Origin: Macrostomum lignano
Taxonomy: Eukaryota
Direction of reading: 5' to 3'
NCBI GenBank assembly: GCA_002269645.1
Contig: NIVC01000759.1
Coordinates: forward strand, 1 to 64,000
DNA length: 64,000 nucleotides
Shown here: in pieces, positions 2,878 through 13,691 of the stretch
Layout of the letters: each line of letters opens with the position of its first letter
Numbering within the stretch: position 1 is the stretch's first letter
Notes under the pieces: generated by a model
Told to the model about the DNA's origin: nothing
Seen by the model: only the letters and a program-made list of their open reading frames with translations
Database searches by the model: none
Position numbers and translations under genes: made by a program

Positions 2878-4856
2878 ACCAAAAGATGTACTACCACAAA
2901 CTGCGCCACGAATAAAATGTGCAGCATCCGATCCTCCAGTTCGAGCACCAAAACCCATAAGGTTCCACTTTATCAAAGTTCCCCAAGTTCCACTATCATA
3001 TGTGAAAACGTTCTGCCCAATGAGGGTAAAGAATCACCAGCAACATTGTATGTATGAATCTATACCAAACCCTTTGATTTAAAATATTAATTTCAAAACA
3101 GATGCCAATCACCGTTATCAATATTGCATAGGCTACAGTTTGATCCGCGTCAGTATTAACATCCGCGCGGCTTGATCCGTCTGATTTTTTGAACTCCAAA
3201 GTACCAAATTTATCATGCCACTCACTAGCAAAAACTATCAATCCGGCGTCGGTTGATAATCCAGATCCAAATTCCGATGTTGGACGTTGGTGACAGTATG
3301 CATAAAACCAAACCGCATCTGCACCATCTCCTGTAGCATTAGCAACTCGGAAAAAGAAAGACGCAGATATATTTTGAAAATGTGTGAAATTGAATTGTAA
3401 AGCACCACTTACTCCAGAAGTTTCACGAGTAATTCTAGCGCCGTTTTGATAATCGATATAAGAAGCGTCACCAATTAAAGAACCGACTGGATATATATCT
3501 CCGGCGGTTGTTGGATTTTGATATCCAGACCAATTGCAAATTACTGGTTCGAACAAGGCCGCATCAATAGCAGGTATTCCATCCAATTTATTTTTATCGC
3601 TTCCAGACATTCTACCATTTGATGTTGGAGTAGCTAGCTGATCTACGTACGCTCGCGGAACTGCAGAAAGTATTTGAGTTGGCCAATTAAGATCTTGAAT
3701 TTCAACACGGTGTTCAAATAATTGTATTTGACGAACCTCGATAGGTTGTGTACCGGTACCACCAGTTGGGAAGAATACGCTATAATATTTCCAAAAATTA
3801 GTCGTTAAATTAGATAGAGCAAATGATGTTGCTTGAACTGGTGATCCCGACGTAGTTAATGTCGTCCATGAATCGGTAGCAACATTTTTTGCGCGAACCG
3901 ACCACCCCGAGGGTATCTCAATTGTTTCACTGCCTGTAATTCTTAATTCAAATATTCTTCTATTATAACCTAAAAATTCAAATTGAATTTCCATATTGGT
4001 TGTGGTTCCGGTATTTGGTGACCATTGTGTCGCAAGGCTTCCATCTCCAACTCGAAAAGCTGTGTTGCCATTTTCAGATGCTGTAAGAACAACATCAGGA
4101 TTTGAAGTATTTGATGTAAGCGGCGTGGTAAAAATATCGGCGTCGGTTGCATTAGCTCGCTCGTTTACTTGGCCTAGAGTTATCGAGTCTGCGTTATCTG
4201 TTCCAAATAATAAATTTGTTAATTTAAAATTATTCATATTAATATTACCACTACGAGTGGCAACTTGATTATCGACATAGTTCTTATCAACCACTGAATC
4301 ACTAGTTGTAATTGAAACATTTATAATTCGGTTGTTGCTCATATCTAGGTTTCCGGTTGCGGTGGTTTGAACATAACGTGAATCAGAATCAGTTCGAGAA
4401 TAAGAATCAGTTACATCTCTTTTTAAATTTAATCCATTATCAACTTCGGTTTTGGTATAAGAATCGGCTACGTTCCGTTTCAAATTTAATGAATTATCAA
4501 CTTCGGTTTTGTATAAGAATCGTTATTCTCTTTAAATTTAATGAATTATCAACCTCTGTTTTGGTATAAGAATCGGCTGTATTGCGTTTTAAATTTAATG
4601 AATTATCAACTTCGGTTTTGGTATAGGAATCGGCTACGTTCCGTTTCAGATTTAGTGAATCATCTATTTGAGTTTTGGTATAGGAATCTGCAACATTTCT
4701 TTTTAAATTTAATTTATTATCAATTTCAGTTTTTTTATAACCTTCATCCTCATTAATATATCGATTATCTCCAAATGTAACACTTATTCCACCAGATGTG
4801 CCACCACCACCACTACTTGTTGTTCCGTTCCATGAGGGTGTTCCAGAAAATAACAT
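2878..4856 (-). CDS. Fibre/spike-like adhesin: 19-aa shaft repeats, F5/8-type-C (discoidin)-like domain, C-terminal L-type lectin-like domain; split by frameshifts near 4520 and 3000
   Basis: Six YTKTEVDNSLNLKRNVADS-type repeats; NNRIINV...KNYVD and RAYVD stalk motifs; GDGSLATQW...WTTL...WKYY...IQLF discoidin pattern; GADAVWF...GFGARTGGSDAAHFI lectin pattern; 3-prime end approximate. Confidence 0.65.
4401..4742 (-). repeat. 57-bp coding tandem repeat (6 units) in the fibre gene
   Basis: Direct repeats of taagaatcggct...aaatttaatgaattatcaacttcggttttgg. Confidence 0.9.
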
Positions 4857-5534: not shown

Positions 5535-6317
5535 TTAAACCTGTTTTATACGTAAAATTATTGTTATTGACTGCCCACCAAAACTTATTAATCTATCGCT
5601 TTCATCTACAATCCTAATATAAATTGATTGAACATTATATTGATTTAATGGGTAATATATTGGGGTTTGAGGTGATACAATCATTTTCTCTCCAATTGGA
5701 ACAGCAAGAAATGGGATTGAATAAATAATTCCACGTTGAACCAAAACTCCATTATTATCTGTTATATAACCGCCGTTTGATATGTCGGTTGTTATATTAA
5801 TTGTATTGACTCCGCCCTCAATGTTTCCACGTATCACCGGTGCTTGATGTGGTAACTATTCGGGAATTAAATCCAAGTATGGTTCTGAGTGAATTTGCAA
5901 TTGTGAAATCAACCTGATATCCGGATCCTAGTGATAGTGTGAATCTGCCAGACGGTAAATCAACACCTATAACAATTGCTCCTGCTACCCAATCACCATT
6001 AGTTGTTAATTCTCCTTCTATATAAGCATTCAAATCAGTATAGCTATACGCTCCTGGGTTAACGCTAAATGTTGTCCAATTGGCTCCGGAATCTTTAGAA
6101 TATCTAAATTGATTATTTGTTGCATTAATTAATTGAGGCATGTTGAAAACCGAAAATAGAATTAAACCTATTTGATAACTTAGGCTTTGATCAAGTTGTA
6201 ACGGGTCGCGCAATTGAATCGTTGTTCGCTGGTTGTCATTATAAACTGTAATGTTGTACTAAATTTTGAATTAGTTCGATCTACCAATTGTTTTATAGTA
6301 TCTAAATTTGTAGTCAT
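5535..6317 (-). CDS. Minor capsid protein (penton, single jelly-roll); frameshifts near 6215 and 5830
   Basis: PGAYSYTDLN...LRTILGF...GVNTINITTDI...PIYYPLN...IRIVDESDRLISF...ITIILRIK, typical Polinton penton; two ORF-track pieces join with single-base shifts. Confidence 0.85.
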
Positions 6318-6384: not shown

Positions 6385-7179
6385 CTATGTCTCTTCTTCC
6401 TCATTATCTTCTTTTATCAAATTTGTTAAAATTCTATGTTTCCTTTCTAACCTCGGATTGATATAAATATGTTTGTATTGGCTATCATCCCAAATTTTTT
6501 TACACATACTTTTAAATGGTTTTGCATCCAATCCGGGATTAAATCTAGCGTGAATATTTTGTAGATCATAGTTATCTAAATCAAACATTACACAACAGCT
6601 AGCATTCTTTTTTATAATCGATTCTAATTCTCTAAAGGATTGAGTAAGATAAAAAGCTCCAATTCCATCTCCTCTACCACTAACAAAAATTTCCTTTTGC
6701 AATTCTTGATCACCGTCATTAATACAATCATCAAAAATAATTAGTGTTTTATCATGTTTTGGAATTTGATCATAGGCTAATCGGGTTGATACTCTAACAG
6801 TTGGGGCGCGATCGGACGAAGTCCGCGACCCTTCGGGGCGATCGGTGATGTTTTCTGGCTGTTGTGCCATTGTTTTACATAAATCCTCAATGTCTGCTAG
6901 ATTAAATCGCGGTTCGTCATCATCCTCATATTGCTCATATGCTCTTAACATTCTAAACAAGACATCTTTTTTTAATTTGTTTTTTAATCCATGTTTAAGA
7001 AATTCATAATATTTTATTCTAGGTTTATTAGTATAAATTATTAAATTATTATAGTCTAACATTCCATCTGTTGTTAATAAATCGTAAACAAAGTGTGTTT
7101 TTCCTTTACCTGATCCTCCGATTACTAAACAAAGAAAAGGATCATTTGGAAATATTTTATTGTGTTTTGCCTTTACCAT
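6385..7179 (-). CDS. A32/FtsK-like genome packaging ATPase
   Basis: Walker A GGSGKGKT, Walker B LIIFDD, SGRG...LTQS motif. Confidence 0.93.
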   Translation of the reverse strand: MVKAKHNKIFPNDPFLCLVIGGSGKGKTHFVYDLLTTDGMLDYNNLIIYTNKPRIKYYEFLKHGLKNKLKKDVLFRMLRAYEQYEDDDEPRFNLADIEDLCKTMAQQPENITDRPEGSRTSSDRAPTVRVSTRLAYDQIPKHDKTLIIFDDCINDGDQELQKEIFVSGRGDGIGAFYLTQSFRELESIIKKNASCCVMFDLDNYDLQNIHARFNPGLDAKPFKSMCKKIWDDSQYKHIYINPRLERKHRILTNLIKEDNEEEET

Positions 7180-7181
7180 TT

Positions 7182-8736
7182 TTAAAGAAATAATTTAAAT
7201 AGGCGCGACGGTCGGAGACCTGCACTCATTTTACAGCGGCGCGACGTGCTTTGCACTGCACTCATTTTACAATGGTGCGTCCGAACAATCGTGCCATCAG
7301 CTTTAGCAATTGACATATATTCCTCTAGAAACAATACGTGGGCGTCAAGTGCCTGATTACCGGTTTTATTAATCTCTAACATATAATTAAGTCCAATATT
7401 GGCTACGTTTTCTTTCTGTGCCGTTAGATCATAAACAACCACTGGATGAATGTTTAGAAACTCTGTGGGTGTGTACTGAGGGACGGCATACGCTTCATTT
7501 TTGGCATAATCTTGATAATATTTTATAAAATCATTAACATTATTATTTGCAATATTTAGATTAAGAGGATCTTTAACCGGATAATATTGATCATCAACCT
7601 GCAGGCGGATATTCTGAACATTAAACTCGTTAATTGCAGCAACTGCGTTGTCTGTTGCGGTGGCTGCTTGTTCTGCTATGGCACCGGATTGAAGCCAATA
7701 TAAATCCCCATTTGCTCTTTTACTCCTTCTATTTGTTATCTTAAACCAAACAAAAATATATCTCACCCGACGTTTTGATGTCAGTATTTGCCACTGGAAT
7801 GAATCCTGATTGTTATTAATGGTTCGCATAAAGTGTCTACGATTCAAATAAAATATTTCCTGATCATGCGTTAATGATTATCGATGTGTTTTAAAAGCGG
7901 AGCTGTTACCTCAATAGTTGGTACGACTAATTGAATTGAATCTATACGAACTGCTATATCGGTTGAAATTGAGGTTCCATAAAGTATCCTAGGCTGATAT
8001 CCACCAGATATTTGCAACTGTATCCCAAATTTTAATCCTTTCCATACCCGATTTGGTGAGAAGAACCCAAATAGCGGAAGATTGAAAAGTCCTGCTCATA
8101 TGCTGTTGCTGTGGTTAAAACCGCGACTGGGAATTTATTCTGACGAGCTATAAAACCTGTATTAATATCTTTTGTATTAGTCATGGTGGTTACAACTGGA
8201 ACTATGTTTGTATTAAGGTAAACAATTAGCGCTGCAGTATCTGCACCGGCTGCGTTTTGTACATTAGGGAAAACTACTGCTTGCCCGTTACCTTTATCCG
8301 GCATCCACCCAACATTATCACCAACTTGTTTTGATAAATAAGTATAATTTAAATGTTTCAAAACTCCATTAATCTCTGCGGGGTTTGATGATGTCTCAAC
8401 CTCAGCACCATTAACAGTTAGTTGAGCTTGGGAAAAACATTTATAAAACCAATCATTTTCAATTATTATTCCGGATCGATCTGCGATATCTCCGCCTGCA
8501 AGAGCAGTTCCATCATTTCTAGTATACAACCATCTAACGCGGAAAAACGCATTTTTCATATCCAATATAGTGTTGGTTGCGCCGATGTCAAAAGTTACCG
8601 TTCCAGTAGTAAAGTTATTTGAATTATCACTTGTTGGTAGGGTATAATTTAAATCGTTTGCTCTGACCTCATTAATATACTGTCGGTGCTTTTTGAAATG
8701 AAATTTATCACTCCACATAGTTTTTGTTTCAGCCAT
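7182..8736 (-). CDS. Major capsid protein (double jelly-roll); two frameshifts near 8075 and 7870
   Basis: FSQAQLTVNGAEVE...; the intervening frame reads PLFGFFSPNRVWKG...IQLVVPTI; C-terminal RYIFVWF...IRLQVDDQYYP...PVVVYDLTAQ. Confidence 0.88.
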
Positions 8737-8770: not shown

Positions 8771-9441
8771 ATGAGTCAATTTATGGACGTTGATGGAGAG
8801 TTAGCGATTTATAAAGAGAAGCAAAGATATTCTGATTTTGTTAGAAATTTACAAAAAAGAAAGTTAGGAATACAATTAGCGGGTGAAAGATTTGCTGCTC
8901 CTTTTGTTAATCCTATTACTGGGAAAATTAGTGAACTAGAAAAAACAGATAAAGATCTTCTGGAAAAAATTGCTAAAAATACTGAGCCAAAAGAGGATGA
9001 AATTTTGGATGAGCCGCCTGCTTATGATGTTGATCAAGCTCAATTGAGAGTTGCAGAGATTAGGGCTGCAGAAAGGGGTGGAGTTGATGAATATCCGAGA
9101 GCTGCACCAACTAGTATTGCTGTGACAGATTTAGGTAATAATAATTATCGAATTGGTGGAGTTGATAAAAATCGAAATGAACTATATAGAGAATTGGGCG
9201 GAGCATATAATATTGTTATGAACCCTAGGGTAAAATTTAACCCTGAATTATATACTAGGGATGAATTAGTAAGTGCAAAAATTTTTTATGATGAGTTGGG
9301 AGTAAGAGCTGCTAAAAATACCAGCTTGTATAAAAGATTGTTAATTCTATAAATAACAAACCAGCTGTTGGAGAAGGATTTAAAACTCCTAGAAAACTTG
9401 TTTTAGCTGCCGCGAAAGCTGCTGGACATACTGGTGTTTAA
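8771..9441 (+). CDS. Conserved Polinton hypothetical (probable core) protein; frameshift near 9345
   Basis: N-terminal ERFAAPFVNPIT motif; continuation in another frame VGEGF...LVLAAAKAAGHTGV matches the Polinton A.KAG.TG motif (from memory). Confidence 0.6.
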
Positions 9442-9468
9442 TTAATTGTTAAATTTATTTTTTATAAA

Positions 9469-10080
9469 ATGGAAACTAATAAGATTTGTACTAAGTGTAA
9501 ACAAGAAAAACCGATGACGAAAGAATTTTATTTTTGGAGAAATGATTCAAAAAAATTTAGAAATGATTGTCGATCTTGTCATAATACCTCATCTGCTATT
9601 TGGATAAAAAACAATAAAGATAAATGGAATGAATATAGAAAAAATAAGTATCACACTGATGATAATTACAAACATATTGTTTTAATTAGAAATAGAATAA
9701 ATTGGGCGTTGAAAAATTTTAATGACAAGGACTATATCTCATATCTTGGTTGCACAAAAGAATTCTTTTTTGATTGGTTAAATTTCACAAGAAATTATTA
9801 TGTATCAAAAGATTATACTGGAAAGTTAGATATTGATCATTTCATTCCCGCTTCTTCGTTTAGTTACAAAGATGAAGATCAGATGAAAAAGTCTGAACAT
9901 TGGACAAATAAAAGATACTTAACTAGCGTAGATAATAACTATAAAAAAGTTAAACAACCAACCATTGAAGAGTTTGCAAAACAATTGGTGCTTTCATGTA
10001 TTTTTAAGGCTATTAAAAATGAGCAACCGAACGAAGTTCGCGTTCCTTCGGAACGATCGGGCGGAGCCCGCGTGCCTTAG
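9469..10080 (+). CDS. HNH-family endonuclease with N-terminal CxxC zinc finger (giant-virus-like, putative homing endonuclease)
   Basis: CTKC...CRSC, YLGC...DW, DIDHFIP...HWTN...DN..KK. Confidence 0.8.
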   Translation: METNKICTKCKQEKPMTKEFYFWRNDSKKFRNDCRSCHNTSSAIWIKNNKDKWNEYRKNKYHTDDNYKHIVLIRNRINWALKNFNDKDYISYLGCTKEFFFDWLNFTRNYYVSKDYTGKLDIDHFIPASSFSYKDEDQMKKSEHWTNKRYLTSVDNNYKKVKQPTIEEFAKQLVLSCIFKAIKNEQPNEVRVPSERSGGARVP

Positions 10081-11659
10081 GCACGATCAAATAGTGTTTG
10101 AAGGAGGATTGTTAGATGTTCAAAAAGGATTAACAAGCTTACCACCAATCTTTACTACTGGAAGGTATACTGGGGAACTACATTTACCATCAATGAACTT
10201 CACAGGTTAACCCGTGGCCTGAGTGAGGAAGGCAATGTCCTTGCTAGTCACTATTTGTGGCGACATCTCCAAATTGCGTGAGACCCGTCATACTGCTTCA
10301 AGTACCACTTCAATTGAGAAATCTTTTGAAGGAACAGAGGTAACTCCTCTTCCCAAAGGTGGCAAGCTTGAGGACACGGTGGCAGTGCGCAGCCAAGCTC
10401 CTAAGTATTTTAAATATAAGGAGAAGGTTCAGAGAGCAGACGGAGATGGGCGGTAATTATCGCCGCTTAAGGTGTGCTCCAGCCTCTTTCGAAAGATTGA
10501 GGGTAAACTACCCGGCACTCGCTTAGATTTGAGATTAAATCCTGATGACACCCCAAAAGCCGATTCAATTCCCATAAATGGAATTGATTGGTTAGCATAC
10601 TATCATGACTTAGCATACAGAGATGCTGATAAGAACACACCCGAGGAAGCATTAAGATTAAAACATGAAGCCGATCAAAAAATGATTCAAGGATTAGATA
10701 ACTTGCAGGGATTATCGGTAGGTCAAAAATTAACTAGGTGGATGGTTAAAAAGATTCTACAATCTAAAGTTAAATTTGGTTTGGGAATTAATTATAATCA
10801 ACATGGAAATAATTGTGTTGAGTGTTTGTTGTTAAGTGGCGGTGGGTTAAGTTCTGATGAGGCAAAGATTCTTCATAAAGAATATCGAAAACCTAAATTT
10901 TATAGAAAAATCATGAACTTCAAAAAGAACGAAATTTGGTATGCTGATTTAATGTCTATGCCGATCGATAAAGGATATAAATATATTTTAACCATATTAG
11001 ATGGTTTTACTCGATACGCGTGGGCTGTTCCTTTGAAATCCAAAAAAGGAGAGGATGTTGCTGCTGCTTTTAGAAGTCTTGGAGAAAAAAGCGAAAGATT
11101 GTGTGTTGACGAAGGAAAAGAATTTTACAATCCTCATATGTATAAATTGTATCATTTTGAAAAAGGAAAAGAAAGGATGAAGGGCGCGAATGGGGAGTAT
11201 ATTAATAAAATTTATTCTATTTATGGAGAGAGTAAAAACGCATTAATAGAAAGATTTAATCGAACTTTAGGTAAGAAATTGTGGTTTCAGTTTAGTCTTA
11301 ATGGAAACCAAAAATGGGTAAAAATATTACCAGACGTTGTAAAAGATTATAACAATTCATATCATTCGGCCATAAAGATGGCTCCTCAACAAGCTTATAA
11401 CAAACCTGAAAATGTTAAGGTTACTTTTGGAAAATTTGAAAAAAATAAAAAGAAATCTTTTAAGGTTGGTGATTCTGTTTATATCTATAAATGGAAAGAT
11501 AAGTTTGAAAAAGGAAGAAAAGGATATTGGAAGATAAGTGAGAAATTTACTATCAGTAAAGTTTTAAATACCAATCCTACAACCTATATAATTGCTGATA
11601 AGGACGGTGAAGAAATATTGGGTTCGTTTTATGAGAACCAACTAATATCAGCGAACTAA
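10019..11659 (+). CDS. PLA2-integrase fusion, join(10019..10207,10511..11659), about 445 aa after intron removal
   Basis: Splicing restores ELHLPSMNFTG-PGTRLDLRL...PINGID...YYHDLAY (parvovirus-type PLA2: GPG loop and HD dyad), in frame with an rve integrase having ADL / VDEG / IERFN (DDE). Confidence 0.85.
10208..10510 (+). ncRNA. Group I intron, IC1-like, 303 nt
   Basis: P1 CAGGU/GCCUG with U.G at the 5-prime splice site; P3 CAUCUCC(10264-70)/GGAGAUG(10442-48); AAAUUGCG and GCGCAGCCAAGCUCCUAA...GGAGAAGGUUCAGA core; P5b and P9 GAAA loops; P7 G-A-GAGCA(10432-38)/UGCUCC(10475-80); P8 hairpin; J8/7 UAAGGUG. Confidence 0.9.
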
Positions 11660-12225: not shown

Positions 12226-12282
12226 TTTTAGTAACAGAAAAAGACCCTTCGCGCCTGCGGCGCGGGCAAGGGGTTATAGAGT

Positions 12283-12550
12283 AGTAGTATAGAAAAAGAC
12301 GCTTCTAGATCAGACCTTATTTTAATGGCCGTTTGTAAGGTCTTAAGAGGGGGGACGCGAGGGGGGTGTTGGGGAGTGTTTGGAAGTGTTTGGAAGTGAT
12401 TTTTATTGTTAGGGGTGATTATGGGTGATTAGATGTATTAATGGTGTTTAGATGTGTTTTTTTATTTACCCCCCGTGTCCCCCCTCTAGACCCTTAAAAC
12501 GGTCATTAAAAAAGTGCTCTGGGTCTAGAAGCGTCTTTTTCTATACTACT
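12283..12550. repeat. Self-complementary Polinton terminus: about 85-bp imperfect inverted repeat with a perfect outer 27 bp
   Basis: 12283-12309 agtagtatagaaaaagacgcttctaga is the exact reverse complement of 12524-12550. Confidence 0.9.
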
Positions 12551-13691
12551 AACACTTATTTCTTCGTCAGGTCTGTAGATGTTCACGCAGGTGTCACGCA
12601 AATTGTTCAAAAATGGACGAATCTTGTACAACGGATCACCAGGTGTGGGATCCTCAAGGCAATCATAAAAGCGAAGAAAGCCGAGCAATTGCTTGAAGCG
12701 GTCTCTAGAGAGCGCCTCAGGTGCTTGAAAGTATGGTGTCGAGTGGTAGCTGCCAGTACTCCAGTAGTCATTCATCTCAGTCTTCTTGTTGCTTCCCATG
12801 TACAGGTACATGCCAATCAACTTCTTGACTTCGTTTGCGCTACATTCGTTCCACTGTAACAAACTCACAGGCAGGTCATCAGCATCCAATGAATGAATTG
12901 CTGCCCAAGCTCTACGGTTAGTCCACATAGCTAGATCTTCAAACAACGAATCAGACAGGAATAAACCTAAGAAGAAGGAAGTTGAGTTCTCAACATCGGC
13001 AGGCACTATTATTCCAGGATTCAGGCCAGGTGTTCCGAAAAACTCGATATCTCTCGTCGATGCGTCGTTCCCAACGATAGCAGGCCGCCACGACAACTCA
13101 TCAGCAACCTGTACGTCCTCATCAACACTGTCCAGAACATCTGACTCACCAGAAGAATCATCTGATAAGAGGTAGTCCTCGTCGTCCGATGTCATGAGTT
13201 CAGACATTTCGTCCACTTGGGCCATTTCAAAGCTCTTTGAGAACTGATTTTATAGTATTCGGCTCAAACCATACTGAGACAGATAAAGTATAGGAAACGA
13301 AAACTTAAGGAGTCAAAGAACCACTGTAGTATAAAGCACGACTGAATAAGCTGTCAAAAAGCTAGACGAGTAAGGAGATGGATCAGCTTCTCTGTTTGAA
13401 CTGACTGGGGCTAGGAAAAGAACGTTTCTTATACTGTTCGTGTTGCCCATTCCTCTTGTACAGGGACCAGTGTGCTTTCAGTCTAGAAACAGGCTACTTA
13501 AATGTACATTTTTGCTTATTTTTCTACCCCAGCCGACTGAATGTCTATTGATAAGCATTGCTTACCATGCCGACCGGAACGGAGAGAAAAAATATCTATG
13601 GCTCAGTCAGAAGCCAAATAGTCTATGGTAAGCACTGCTTACCATCCGACTGGAACGGAGATGAAAAATTTTGGGCCCAGTCTTGAAGAGG
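12551..13691 (-). mobile_element. piggyBac transposon 5-prime half, interrupted by the Polinton
   Basis: TTAA (13692-95) followed by CCTCTTCAAGACTGGGCC terminus; 33-bp subterminal direct repeats (13553, 13630); transposase ORF from 13225 with acidic N-terminus, MSRDRF-like LSRDRF, DPLYKIRP, ending at PDEEISV just before the catalytic D. Confidence 0.88.

What the first reader, a model, noticed from the sequence alone, without database searches (positions are those of the whole stretch)
10475..10515. Intron appears to end in omega-A, not the near-universal omega-G
Only a 3-prime splice site after A10510 restores G-P-G-T in frame. P9.0 geometry agrees: AG at 10481-82 pairs with CU at 10508-09, placing A10510 in the omega position, while the P7 G-C binding pair is canonical. 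Omega-A is a rare exception (from memory, reported for a hexacoral mitochondrial ND5 intron). This is either a natural variant with altered second-step chemistry or protein help, an inactivating G-to-A mutation in this copy, or a consensus error.
Basis: partly seen in the sequence, partly recalled or inferred. Interest (0 to 1): 0.7.

Follow-up and report, generated by a model that had tools for sequence, protein, structure and literature searches.

The report
Group I intron copy ending in A
A self-splicing intron in the integrase gene of a virus-like element embedded in a eukaryotic genome really does end in A instead of the required G, but all seven related introns end in G and this copy sits in a broken element, so it is most likely a dead copy's mutation, not a new kind of ribozyme.

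Summary
Window 10208-10510 is a 303-nt group I intron (Rfam RF00028, 48.7 bits, E=3e-11). It splits a phospholipase-A2-like/rve-integrase gene of an AT-rich polinton-like viral element. About 150 homologous proteins read ...NFTG|PGTRLD... with no insertion. Only joining U10207 to C10511 with a canonical 5' exon U restores that motif, so the last intron base is A10510. P9.0 (10481-82 with 10508-09), P10 and an unchanged G-C guanosine-binding pair in P7 all agree, and family covariation supports them.

Seven homologous introns at the same GGU|CCN site in metagenomic relatives all end in G. This includes the closest lineage (...GAGAACUG|CCA against the window's ...GUAAACUA|CCC).

The window copy has no homing-endonuclease ORF and no compensating change in the G-binding pocket. 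Its host element has frame breaks in at least three genes and probably four (major capsid, the gene upstream of the integrase, fibre, probably penton). The ancestral start codon of the intron-bearing gene is also missing.

Best reading: a copy-specific G-to-A substitution in a decaying endogenous element, expected to block exon ligation. A consensus error or a tolerated omega-A variant cannot be excluded without reads or RNA data.

The parts
10112..10207 (+). Exon 1 of the PLA2-like/rve-integrase gene (homologous part, ...LDVQKGLTSLPPIFTTGRYTGELHLPSMNFTG). The frame is open upstream to 9965. The nearest in-frame ATG is 10019. The position matching the ATG of the closest relative (L009/P0081) reads TTA at 10112-10114.
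10208..10510 (+). Group I intron, 303 nt, with no internal ORF.
   Evidence: Rfam RF00028 48.7 bits, E=3e-11. Homologous introns score 65-100 bits. Family structure: 95.1% of cells paired against about 40% in slid controls, with 16 pairs showing compensatory change.
10203..10221 (+). P1. 5' exon CAGGU (10203-10207) pairs with the internal guide GCCUG (10217-10221). U10207.G10217 is the wobble pair at the 5' splice site.
   Evidence: Rfam alignment. The same layout is seen in L005, L008 and L039.
10212..10216 (+). P10 part of the internal guide (CCGUG). It pairs with the first bases of exon 2, CCCGG (10511-10515), with one C.U mismatch.
   Evidence: Read from the sequence. Covaries with L005 (exon CCAGGU with guide AACCUUG) and L039 (exon CAGGAA with guide UUCCUG).
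10432..10438 (+). P7 5' strand. G10432 pairs with C10480, A10433 is bulged, G10434 pairs with C10479 (the guanosine-binding pair), and 10435-10438 pair with 10475-10478.
   Evidence: the G-C binding pair is present in 5 of 5 sequences, and two P7 pairs show compensatory change (GC/CG and CG/UA).
10475..10480 (+). P7 3' strand (UGCUCC).
10481..10482 (+). P9.0 5' half (AG). It pairs with C10508 and U10509.
   Evidence: the first pair is A-U in 7 of 7 sequences. The second pair is GC in 4, CG in 1, UA in 1, and unpaired in L001, where a one-column shift would pair it.
10483..10502 (+). P9 hairpin (CCUCUUUC GAAA GAUUGAGG). Its sequence is identical in L005 and L006.
10508..10509 (+). P9.0 3' half (CU).
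10510..10510 (+). Omega position. It is A here and G in all seven homologous introns.
   Evidence: Alignment column 310 of A3, and L039.
10511..11659 (+). Exon 2. It holds the rest of the PLA2-like domain (HD dyad in YYHDLAY) plus the rve integrase. The frame is intact through to the stop codon.
   Evidence: Homologues reach E=3.5e-149.
9469..10080 (+). Free-standing HNH / endonuclease-VII-like ORF, followed by three GC-rich hairpins (about 10030-10090). It is inserted between the upstream gene and exon 1, and is absent from the closest relative L009.
   Evidence: phrog_1035 E=3.6e-8. L009 has only 3 nt between the two genes.

Best explanation
Window 10208-10510 is a member of a mobile group I intron family. 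The family sits between the Gly (GGU) and Pro (CCN) codons of the calcium-loop motif F-T-G-P-G, in the phospholipase-A2-like/rve-integrase gene of polinton-like viruses.

In a working copy, exogenous guanosine attacks after U10207, which is held in P1 by the U.G10217 wobble. The terminal intron guanosine then docks into the P7 pocket (G10434-C10479), positioned by P9.0 and P10, and the exons are ligated to give ...NFTG-PGT....

In this copy the terminal base is A10510 and the pocket is still the guanosine-specific G-C pair. The second step (exon ligation) is therefore predicted to be severely impaired. The pre-mRNA would then stall after 5' cleavage or use a cryptic site.

The A is most likely a copy-specific G-to-A transition. 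It probably arose after the element became an endogenous, decaying insertion. The copy has no homing endonuclease, its capsid-module genes are frameshifted, and the ancestral start codon of the gene is gone.

Shown: intron identity, splice junction, P7/P9.0/P10 geometry, G in all relatives, and frame breaks in the element. Inferred: that the A abolishes ligation, that it arose after inactivation, and that it is not an assembly error.
For: 1. All seven related introns at the same site end in G:
- L001 ...UUAAUG|CCA
- L002 ...CUAAGUG|CCA
- L005 and L006 ...GAGAACUG|CCA
- L007 ...UUCCUG|CCA
- L008 ...GACGAAUG|CCC
- L039 ...CUAAGUG|CCA
L005 and L006 share the window's P7-P9 tail, 41 of 45 nt. Three further ORFs start M|PGT.

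2. The G-binding pair is unchanged in the window (GC in 5 of 5), so nothing compensates for an A.

3. The element is damaged:
- The L005 capsid protein matches the window in frames -2 and -3.
- The L009 upstream protein matches in frame +2 and then +1, switching between 9340 and 9370.
- The fibre repeat unit continues in another frame after a 5-nt length difference between repeat units.
- Two overlapping penton ORFs lie in different frames.
- The ATG of the closest relative is TTA here.

4. Relatives L005 and L008 carry a 199-233 aa endonuclease-like ORF in the intron. The window intron has none. This fits the late, degenerating stage of the homing cycle.

5. Its Rfam score (48.7 bits) is the lowest among the full-length copies (65.3, 69.4 and 100).
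Against: The ribozyme core of the window copy looks otherwise intact. All 42 scored pairs form. Several window-specific changes are compensated: P3 10266/10446, P4 10279/10387, and a rebuilt P8. P9.0 and P10 are preserved, and P10 has co-varied with the window's own CCC codon. Exon 2 is open for 382 codons with its catalytic motifs present.

The lineage was therefore under selection until recently, and a single neutral hit landing exactly on omega is unlikely in advance.

The nearest available intron is only about 82% identical, so the change cannot be dated. No reads or same-genome paralogues could be examined.

Omega-A does splice in vivo in one natural lineage (PMC6545197).
Confidence: 0.65

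Rival explanations
1. Consensus or assembly error. The real base at 10510 is G, and the frame breaks in the element are also sequencing artefacts.
For: The element resembles the protease- and rve-bearing PLV cluster described from cryptophyte genomes. Those genomes were assembled from R9.4.1 nanopore reads and hold hundreds of paralogous PLV copies (PMC12220804). That setting is prone to consensus errors. At least one frame break lies at an A-run (TATAAAAGATTG, about 9335-9345). All breaks seen are frameshifts, and I noticed no nonsense codon in an otherwise continuous frame.
Against: The source of the window is not established. Long-read errors are mainly indels, not G-to-A substitutions. The fibre break involves a 5-nt length difference between repeat units, more than a homopolymer slip. 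The missing start codon and the HNH cassette insertion are structural differences, not base-calling noise.
Confidence: 0.12
2. A natural, tolerated omega-A variant. The intron still splices at 10207|10511, slowly or with protein help. P9.0 and P10 select the site, and A is accepted in the second step, as in the hexacoral ND5-717 intron.
For: The core, P9.0 and P10 are intact and show window-specific compensatory changes. Exon 2 is intact. A precedent exists for accurate exon ligation in vivo without omega-G (PMC6545197).
Against: Omega is G in 7 of 7 relatives, and A is private to this copy. The G-binding pair is unchanged. From memory, Tetrahymena work (Michel et al. 1989; Been and Perrotta 1991) found that adenosine-like substrates need an A-U pocket. 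The host element carries frame breaks in at least three genes, so nothing suggests selection on this copy.
Confidence: 0.1
3. Splicing normally uses a different 3' site that does end in G. One candidate is after G10501, which is in frame and gives NFTG-GKL-PGT. The others are after G10502 or G10514 combined with a 5' site at U10208. Under this reading A10510 is not omega at all.
For: The Rfam model's terminal G aligns to G10501. Joins 10207|10502, 10208|10503 and 10208|10515 are in frame and free of stop codons.
Against: None of about 150 homologues has an insertion or deletion at this point. The PF08398 score falls from 32.4 to 23.3 or 21.6 bits, below the cut-off. These sites have no P9.0 or P10 pairing. 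In L005 the same Rfam end-point (1519) lies 9 nt before the true end fixed by the exon (1528).
Confidence: 0.05

Closest known systems
Hexacoral/corallimorph mitochondrial ND5-717 group I intron (natural omega-A)
   Same: Its terminal intron nucleotide is not G, while the intron keeps a conventional core. Exons are reported to be accurately ligated in vivo (PMC6545197).
   Different: ND5-717 is obligatory and vertically inherited, and the loss of omega-G is shared across the lineage. Here the A is private to one copy among eight homologous introns. The intron family is mobile, with endonuclease ORFs in relatives, and the copy lies in a degraded nuclear insertion.
Tetrahymena LSU intron G414 and G264-C311 mutants (Michel et al. 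1989; Price and Cech 1988; Been and Perrotta 1991; cited from memory, not re-read here)
   Same: They give the mechanistic expectation. Omega-G docks in the P7 G-C pocket for exon ligation. Changing omega to A with an unchanged pocket cripples the second step or activates cryptic sites.
   Different: Those are engineered mutants assayed in vitro. No activity data exist for the window intron.
Group I introns catalogued in endogenous polinton-like viruses of protists (PMC12220804)
   Same: RF00028 hits of 309-376 nt occur in PLVs that carry a cysteine protease and an rve integrase, in protist genomes. This is the same kind of element and about the same intron size as here.
   Different: [quoted passage not shown] Here the short ORF is shown to be exon 1 of the PLA2-like/integrase gene. 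Whether those introns belong to the same family was not tested.
Homing-cycle degeneration of mobile group I introns (Goddard and Burt 1999; from memory)
   Same: Relatives carry an intron-encoded endonuclease-like ORF. The window copy has lost it, or never had it, and shows a splicing-site defect. Intron-less alleles coexist (L004, L009).
   Different: The cycle is normally described for organelle and phage genes. Here the host gene belongs to a virus-like element that is itself endogenised.

Membership tests
Group I intron (Rfam RF00028) | Score at or above the family's curated gathering threshold | tested here: not met
   48.7 bits against a threshold of 50, E=3e-11. Homologous copies pass: L007 100, L039 69.4 and L005 65.3 bits.
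Group I intron (Rfam RF00028) | Conserved core helices P3-P8, including the P3/P7 pseudoknot, supported by covariation | tested here: met
   95.1% of cells paired, against 39-45% when partners are slid. 16 pairs show changes on both sides. P7 has 2 compensatory pairs.
Group I intron (Rfam RF00028) | 5' exon ends in U, paired as a U.G wobble in P1 with the internal guide sequence | tested here: met
   U10207.G10217. All intron-bearing alleles use GGU, while the intron-less alleles use GGC or GGG.
Group I intron (Rfam RF00028) | Guanosine-binding G-C pair in P7 next to a bulged nucleotide | tested here: met
   G10434-C10479 with A10433 bulged. The pair is GC in 5 of 5 sequences.
Group I intron (Rfam RF00028) | Terminal intron nucleotide is G (omega-G) | tested here: not met
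   A10510 in the window, G in 7 of 7 homologues.
Group I intron (Rfam RF00028) | P9.0 and P10 pairings that define the 3' splice site | tested here: met
   P9.0 is AG with CU, and covaries to AC/GU and AU/AU in relatives. P10 is CCCGG with CCGUG, and covaries with L005 and L039.
Group I intron (Rfam RF00028) | Self-splicing activity | not testable with these tools
   No RNA or biochemical data.
Naturally omega-A group I introns (ND5-717 type) | Non-G omega conserved across the intron's lineage | tested here: not met
   The A is private to the window copy. The closest relatives, L005 and L006, have G.
Naturally omega-A group I introns (ND5-717 type) | Accurately ligated exons observed in vivo | not testable with these tools
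   No transcript data for this locus.
PLA2-like (PF08398) / rve-integrase fusion protein of polinton-like viruses | The spliced product matches PF08398 across the junction, and homologues share the fusion architecture | tested here: met
   PF08398 32.4 bits against a cut-off of 23.9. rve 32.4 bits against 32.6, borderline. Homologues annotated with both domains reach E=3.5e-149.

The most novel reading that the evidence does not exclude
The window carries a functional group I ribozyme that carries out exon ligation with a terminal adenosine while keeping a guanosine-type G-C pocket. It would rely on P9.0 and P10, and perhaps a host or viral protein. This would be only the second natural omega-A lineage, and the first outside cnidarian mitochondria.
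Probability: 0.09. Interest if true: 0.65.

Novelty: new member of a known kind. Interest (0 to 1): 0.25.

Why it matters
If the A were functional, it would offer a small (303 nt), ORF-free natural ribozyme for studying how the second splicing step can dispense with omega-G. The evidence points instead to a one-off defect in a decaying copy, so the omega-A is of little consequence in its own right.

The by-products have modest value:
- A mobile group I intron family is defined at one exact site, the calcium-loop Gly|Pro junction, of the PLA2-like/integrase gene of polinton-like viruses.
- Intron-less alleles, endonuclease-bearing alleles and endonuclease-less alleles all coexist.
- There is covariation support for P7, P9.0 and P10.
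- There is a hint that 'short protein' genes reported next to PLV introns are really exon 1 of the integrase gene.

Tried and rejected
- The Rfam default scan of the whole window found nothing. A 13-kb permissive scan also lost the intron to the filters. Only the 800-nt scan recovered it.
- A PDB sequence search with the spliced N-terminal domain gave only noise.
- A protein-guided scan of IMG/VR with exon 2 found no relatives.
- The single JGI metagenome scan returned one locus, L004, which is intron-less.
- A DNA motif scan of IMG/VR with the J6/7-P7-P3 core found 29 loci with related introns. None lies at the PLA2 site, and none has the window's GAGCA/UGCUC P7 variant.
- An exact-sequence look-up of the window's packaging ATPase, meant to reach same-genome paralogues, found nothing on record. 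P0076 was also not on record.
- A search with the intron-tail read-through peptide gave one new locus, L039, which has omega-G.
- There is no second copy of the element in the window.
- A minimum-free-energy fold of the intron does not reproduce the group I core and is only weakly better than shuffles (z = -1.88), so it was not used.
- I considered and rejected 3' sites ending in G (10501, 10502, 10514) on protein conservation, Pfam score and lack of P9.0/P10 pairing.
- I considered a second intron carrying the HNH ORF upstream of exon 1. No RNA family match supports it. Comparison with L009 shows instead a cassette inserted in an intergenic gap.

Full report
WHAT IS THERE

Window 1 to about 12200 is AT-rich (GC about 0.33). 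The flank has GC about 0.5.

The AT-rich part encodes the module of a polinton-like virus (PLV):
- a double-jelly-roll-type capsid gene split over 8736-7182
- an A32-like packaging ATPase (6385-7179, PF04665)
- a small protease-like ORF
- a penton-like gene
- a repetitive fibre gene
- on the plus strand, a gene whose exon 2 (10511-11659) carries an rve integrase

The flank holds piggyBac, P-element-like and reverse-transcriptase fragments and a TRAF-type zinc-finger gene. The element is therefore an insertion in a eukaryotic nuclear genome. The organism was not identified.

The gene set (cysteine protease plus rve integrase plus group I intron) resembles a PLV cluster described from cryptophyte genomes (PMC12220804). 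That is a resemblance, not an identification.

THE INTRON AND ITS ENDS

An 800-nt Rfam scan finds RF00028 at 10198-10501 with 48.7 bits and E=3e-11, just under the gathering score of 50. This explains the empty default scan.

The model places the U.G wobble of P1 at U10207.G10217, so the 5' exon ends ...AAC UUC ACA GGU.

Two protein searches returned about 200 relatives of the PLA2-like (PF08398)/integrase protein. In these the motif reads ...HLPGHNFTG-PGTRLDLRLNPD... with no gap at the junction.

I enumerated every stop-free, in-frame join around the two boundaries. GPGT is restored only by 10207|10511 (last intron base A10510) or 10206|10510 (last intron base U10509). No join that ends in G restores it.

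Pfam PF08398 scores for the candidate joins (cut-off 23.9):

| Join | Bits |
|---|---|
| In-frame alternative after G10501 | 23.3 |
| 10208|10515 | 21.6 |
| Exon 2 alone | 20.1 |

The Rfam model's final G falls on G10501 because the model ends two bases after its P9 hairpin. In L005 the same thing happens 9 nt before the true end.

STRUCTURE AROUND THE 3' SPLICE SITE

I derived helices from the Rfam alignment and tested them on an alignment of the window with six homologous introns (A3).

Whole-structure results:
- 95.1% of cells form standard pairs, against 39-45% when the 3' partners are slid by 1-3 columns.
- 16 of 42 pairs show changes on both sides.
- 0 of 500 shuffles reach the observed values.

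P7 is G10432-C10480, bulged A10433, G10434-C10479, then 10435-10438 with 10475-10478. The G-C pair at the guanosine-binding position is present in all five sequences that cover it. Two neighbouring pairs covary (GAGCA/UGCUC in the window, L005 and L006; GACUA/UAGUC in L007 and L008).

P9.0 is A10481-U10509 and G10482-C10508. The first pair is A-U in 7 of 7 sequences. The second is G-C in four, C-G in L002 and U-A in L008. L001 needs a one-column shift.

P10 pairs exon-2 bases CCCGG (10511-10515) with guide bases 10212-10216, with one C.U mismatch. It covaries. L005 has exon CCAGGU with guide AACCUUG, and L039 has exon CAGGAA with guide UUCCUG. This part was read from the sequences and not scored by a tool.

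All three determinants put position 10510 in the omega slot.

WHAT THE RELATIVES SHOW

ORFs that start at or just before PGT flagged the intron-bearing alleles. Fetching their contigs gave seven homologous introns at exactly the same GGU|CCN site:

| Locus | 3' end of intron and start of exon 2 |
|---|---|
| L001 | ...GGUAGUUAAUG|CCAGGU |
| L002 | ...CCACUAAGUG|CCAGGA |
| L005 | ...GAUUGAGGGAGAACUG|CCAGGU |
| L006 | same tail as L005 |
| L007 | ...CAAGAAUUCCUG|CCAGGA |
| L008 | ...AAAGACGAAUG|CCCGGU |
| L039 | ...CCACUAAGUG|CCAGGA |
| Window | ...GAUUGAGGGUAAACUA|CCCGGC |

Every relative ends in G.

L005 and L006 are the same sub-lineage as the window. They share the P7 variant and an identical P9 hairpin, and 41 of the last 45 nt match.

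Three more proteins (P0091, P0106, P0116) begin M|PGT. This implies a start-type codon ending in G immediately before the Pro codon. That is an inference, and their DNA was not fetched.

Intron-less alleles also exist. These include the closest protein relative, P0081/L009 (71% identity, ACU GGC CCA), and L004 (ACU GGG CCA).

STATE OF THE WINDOW COPY

Two features argue that the lineage was a working ribozyme until recently.
- All scored pairs form.
- Of 26 changes private to the window, several are compensated: C-G to U-A in P3 at 10266/10446, G-C to U.G in P4 at 10279/10387, and a rebuilt short P8.

Against current function:
- There is no change in the G-binding pair that could accommodate adenosine.
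- The intron lacks the 199-233 aa ORF that L005 and L008 carry in the P2.1 loop. That ORF has a weak Eco47II-like PD-(D/E)XK signal, E about 6e-4, below the Pfam cut-off.
- The capsid protein of L005 matches the window in two different frames, and the L009 upstream protein switches frame between 9340 and 9370. The capsid ORFs suggest two breaks.
- The fibre repeat unit continues in another frame after a 5-nt length difference between repeat units.
- Two penton ORFs overlap in different frames.
- Where L009 has ...UAAAAA AUG GAU AUU CAA AAA GG, the window has an HNH-endonuclease cassette of about 660 nt (9442 to about 10105; phrog_1035 E=3.6e-8). After it the window reads UUA GAU GUU CAA AAA GG, so the ancestral start codon is gone. 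An in-frame ATG remains at 10019.

WEIGHING THE READINGS

A copy-specific G-to-A transition in an endogenised, decaying element explains three things together: the private A, the unchanged pocket, and the damaged surroundings. I give it about 0.65.

Its weakness is that a single neutral hit on exactly this base is improbable in advance. Also, the nearest available intron is only about 82% identical, so the change cannot be dated.

An assembly error (about 0.12) is a live option if the window comes from a noisy long-read assembly with many paralogous PLV copies, like those described in PMC12220804. However, the defects include multi-base and structural differences, and long-read errors are mostly indels.

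A tolerated omega-A (about 0.1) is kept alive by the intact core, P9.0 and P10, and by the ND5-717 precedent, where ligated exons are observed despite the missing omega-G (PMC6545197).

Regular use of another 3' site ending in G (about 0.05) conflicts with protein conservation and with P9.0/P10.

The expectation that omega-A with a G-C pocket blocks exon ligation rests on classical Tetrahymena mutagenesis, recalled from memory (Michel et al. 1989; Price and Cech 1988; Been and Perrotta 1991). PMC6545197 also states that omega-G is essential for the second step.

COMPARISON AND NOVELTY

The intron passes every structural test for group I membership except omega-G and the Rfam threshold, which it misses by 1.3 bits.

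It does not belong with the natural omega-A introns, because the A is not conserved in its lineage.

Group I introns in PLVs have already been catalogued (PMC12220804). What is added here:
- the exact insertion site in the PLA2-like/integrase gene
- the allelic series of intron-less, endonuclease-bearing and endonuclease-less forms
- covariation support for the helices that define the 3' splice site

The omega-A itself is best filed as a defective new member of a known kind. Interest is low, about 0.25.

Noticed in passing
window 9442-10105 (ORF 9469-10080, hairpins about 10030-10090): A free-standing HNH / endonuclease-VII-like gene (phrog_1035 E=3.6e-8) followed by three consecutive GC-rich hairpins. 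It is inserted in what is a 3-nt intergenic gap in the closest relative, L009. It lies directly upstream of the intron-bearing gene and replaces that gene's ATG. This is reminiscent of phage free-standing endonucleases next to ORF-less introns ('collaborative homing'), but that was not tested.
   Followed up: partly
L005 776-1477 and L008 1745-2344: The homologous introns carry a 199-233 aa ORF in the P2.1 loop, and its 3' end overlaps the ribozyme core. It has a weak Eco47II-like restriction-endonuclease (PD-(D/E)XK) signal (PF09553, E about 6e-4, below cut-off) and no PHROG match. It may be an undescribed homing-endonuclease family.
   Followed up: partly
window 9335-9441: The gene upstream of the integrase (8771-9352) changes frame near an A-run (TATAAAAGATTG). 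Its conserved C-terminus (...GEGFKTPRKLVLAAAKAAGHTGV*) continues in another frame, as shown by comparison with L009.
   Followed up: yes
window 7182-8736 (-), 5535-6213 (-), 2996-4856 (-): The major capsid gene has apparently two frame breaks. The penton-like gene has one overlap-type break. The fibre gene has a break inside its NLKR..ADSYTKTEVDN repeats. It was not determined whether these are true decay or assembly indels.
   Followed up: partly
window 12282-12364 and 12469-12551: An inverted repeat of about 85 nt (83.5% identity) right at the GC-content step at the right edge of the AT-rich element. It overlaps a weak microRNA-precursor-like Rfam hit (RF04210, 26 bits, far below threshold) and the 3' end of a piggyBac-like fragment (12506-13225, minus strand). 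It may be a MITE or transposon terminus.
   Followed up: no
literature versus L008 1505-1696, L039 513-650 and window exon 1: [quoted passage not shown] In the loci studied here, the short ORF before the intron is exon 1 of the PLA2-like/rve-integrase gene. The published 'short protein' may be the same mis-called exon. I did not check this against their sequences.
   Followed up: no
L010-L038 (IMG/VR): Twenty-nine viral contigs, including giant-virus bins, contain group I introns with the same J6/7-P7-P3 core motif (GTTCAGAGA..ARACGGA..TGGG) in other genes. This intron type is widespread among protist-virus metagenome contigs.
   Followed up: partly
intron-bearing versus intron-less alleles (L005, L008, L039, window versus L004, L009): All intron-bearing alleles use GGU for the Gly codon before the intron, which supplies the U of the U.G wobble. 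The two intron-less alleles examined use GGC or GGG.
   Followed up: yes
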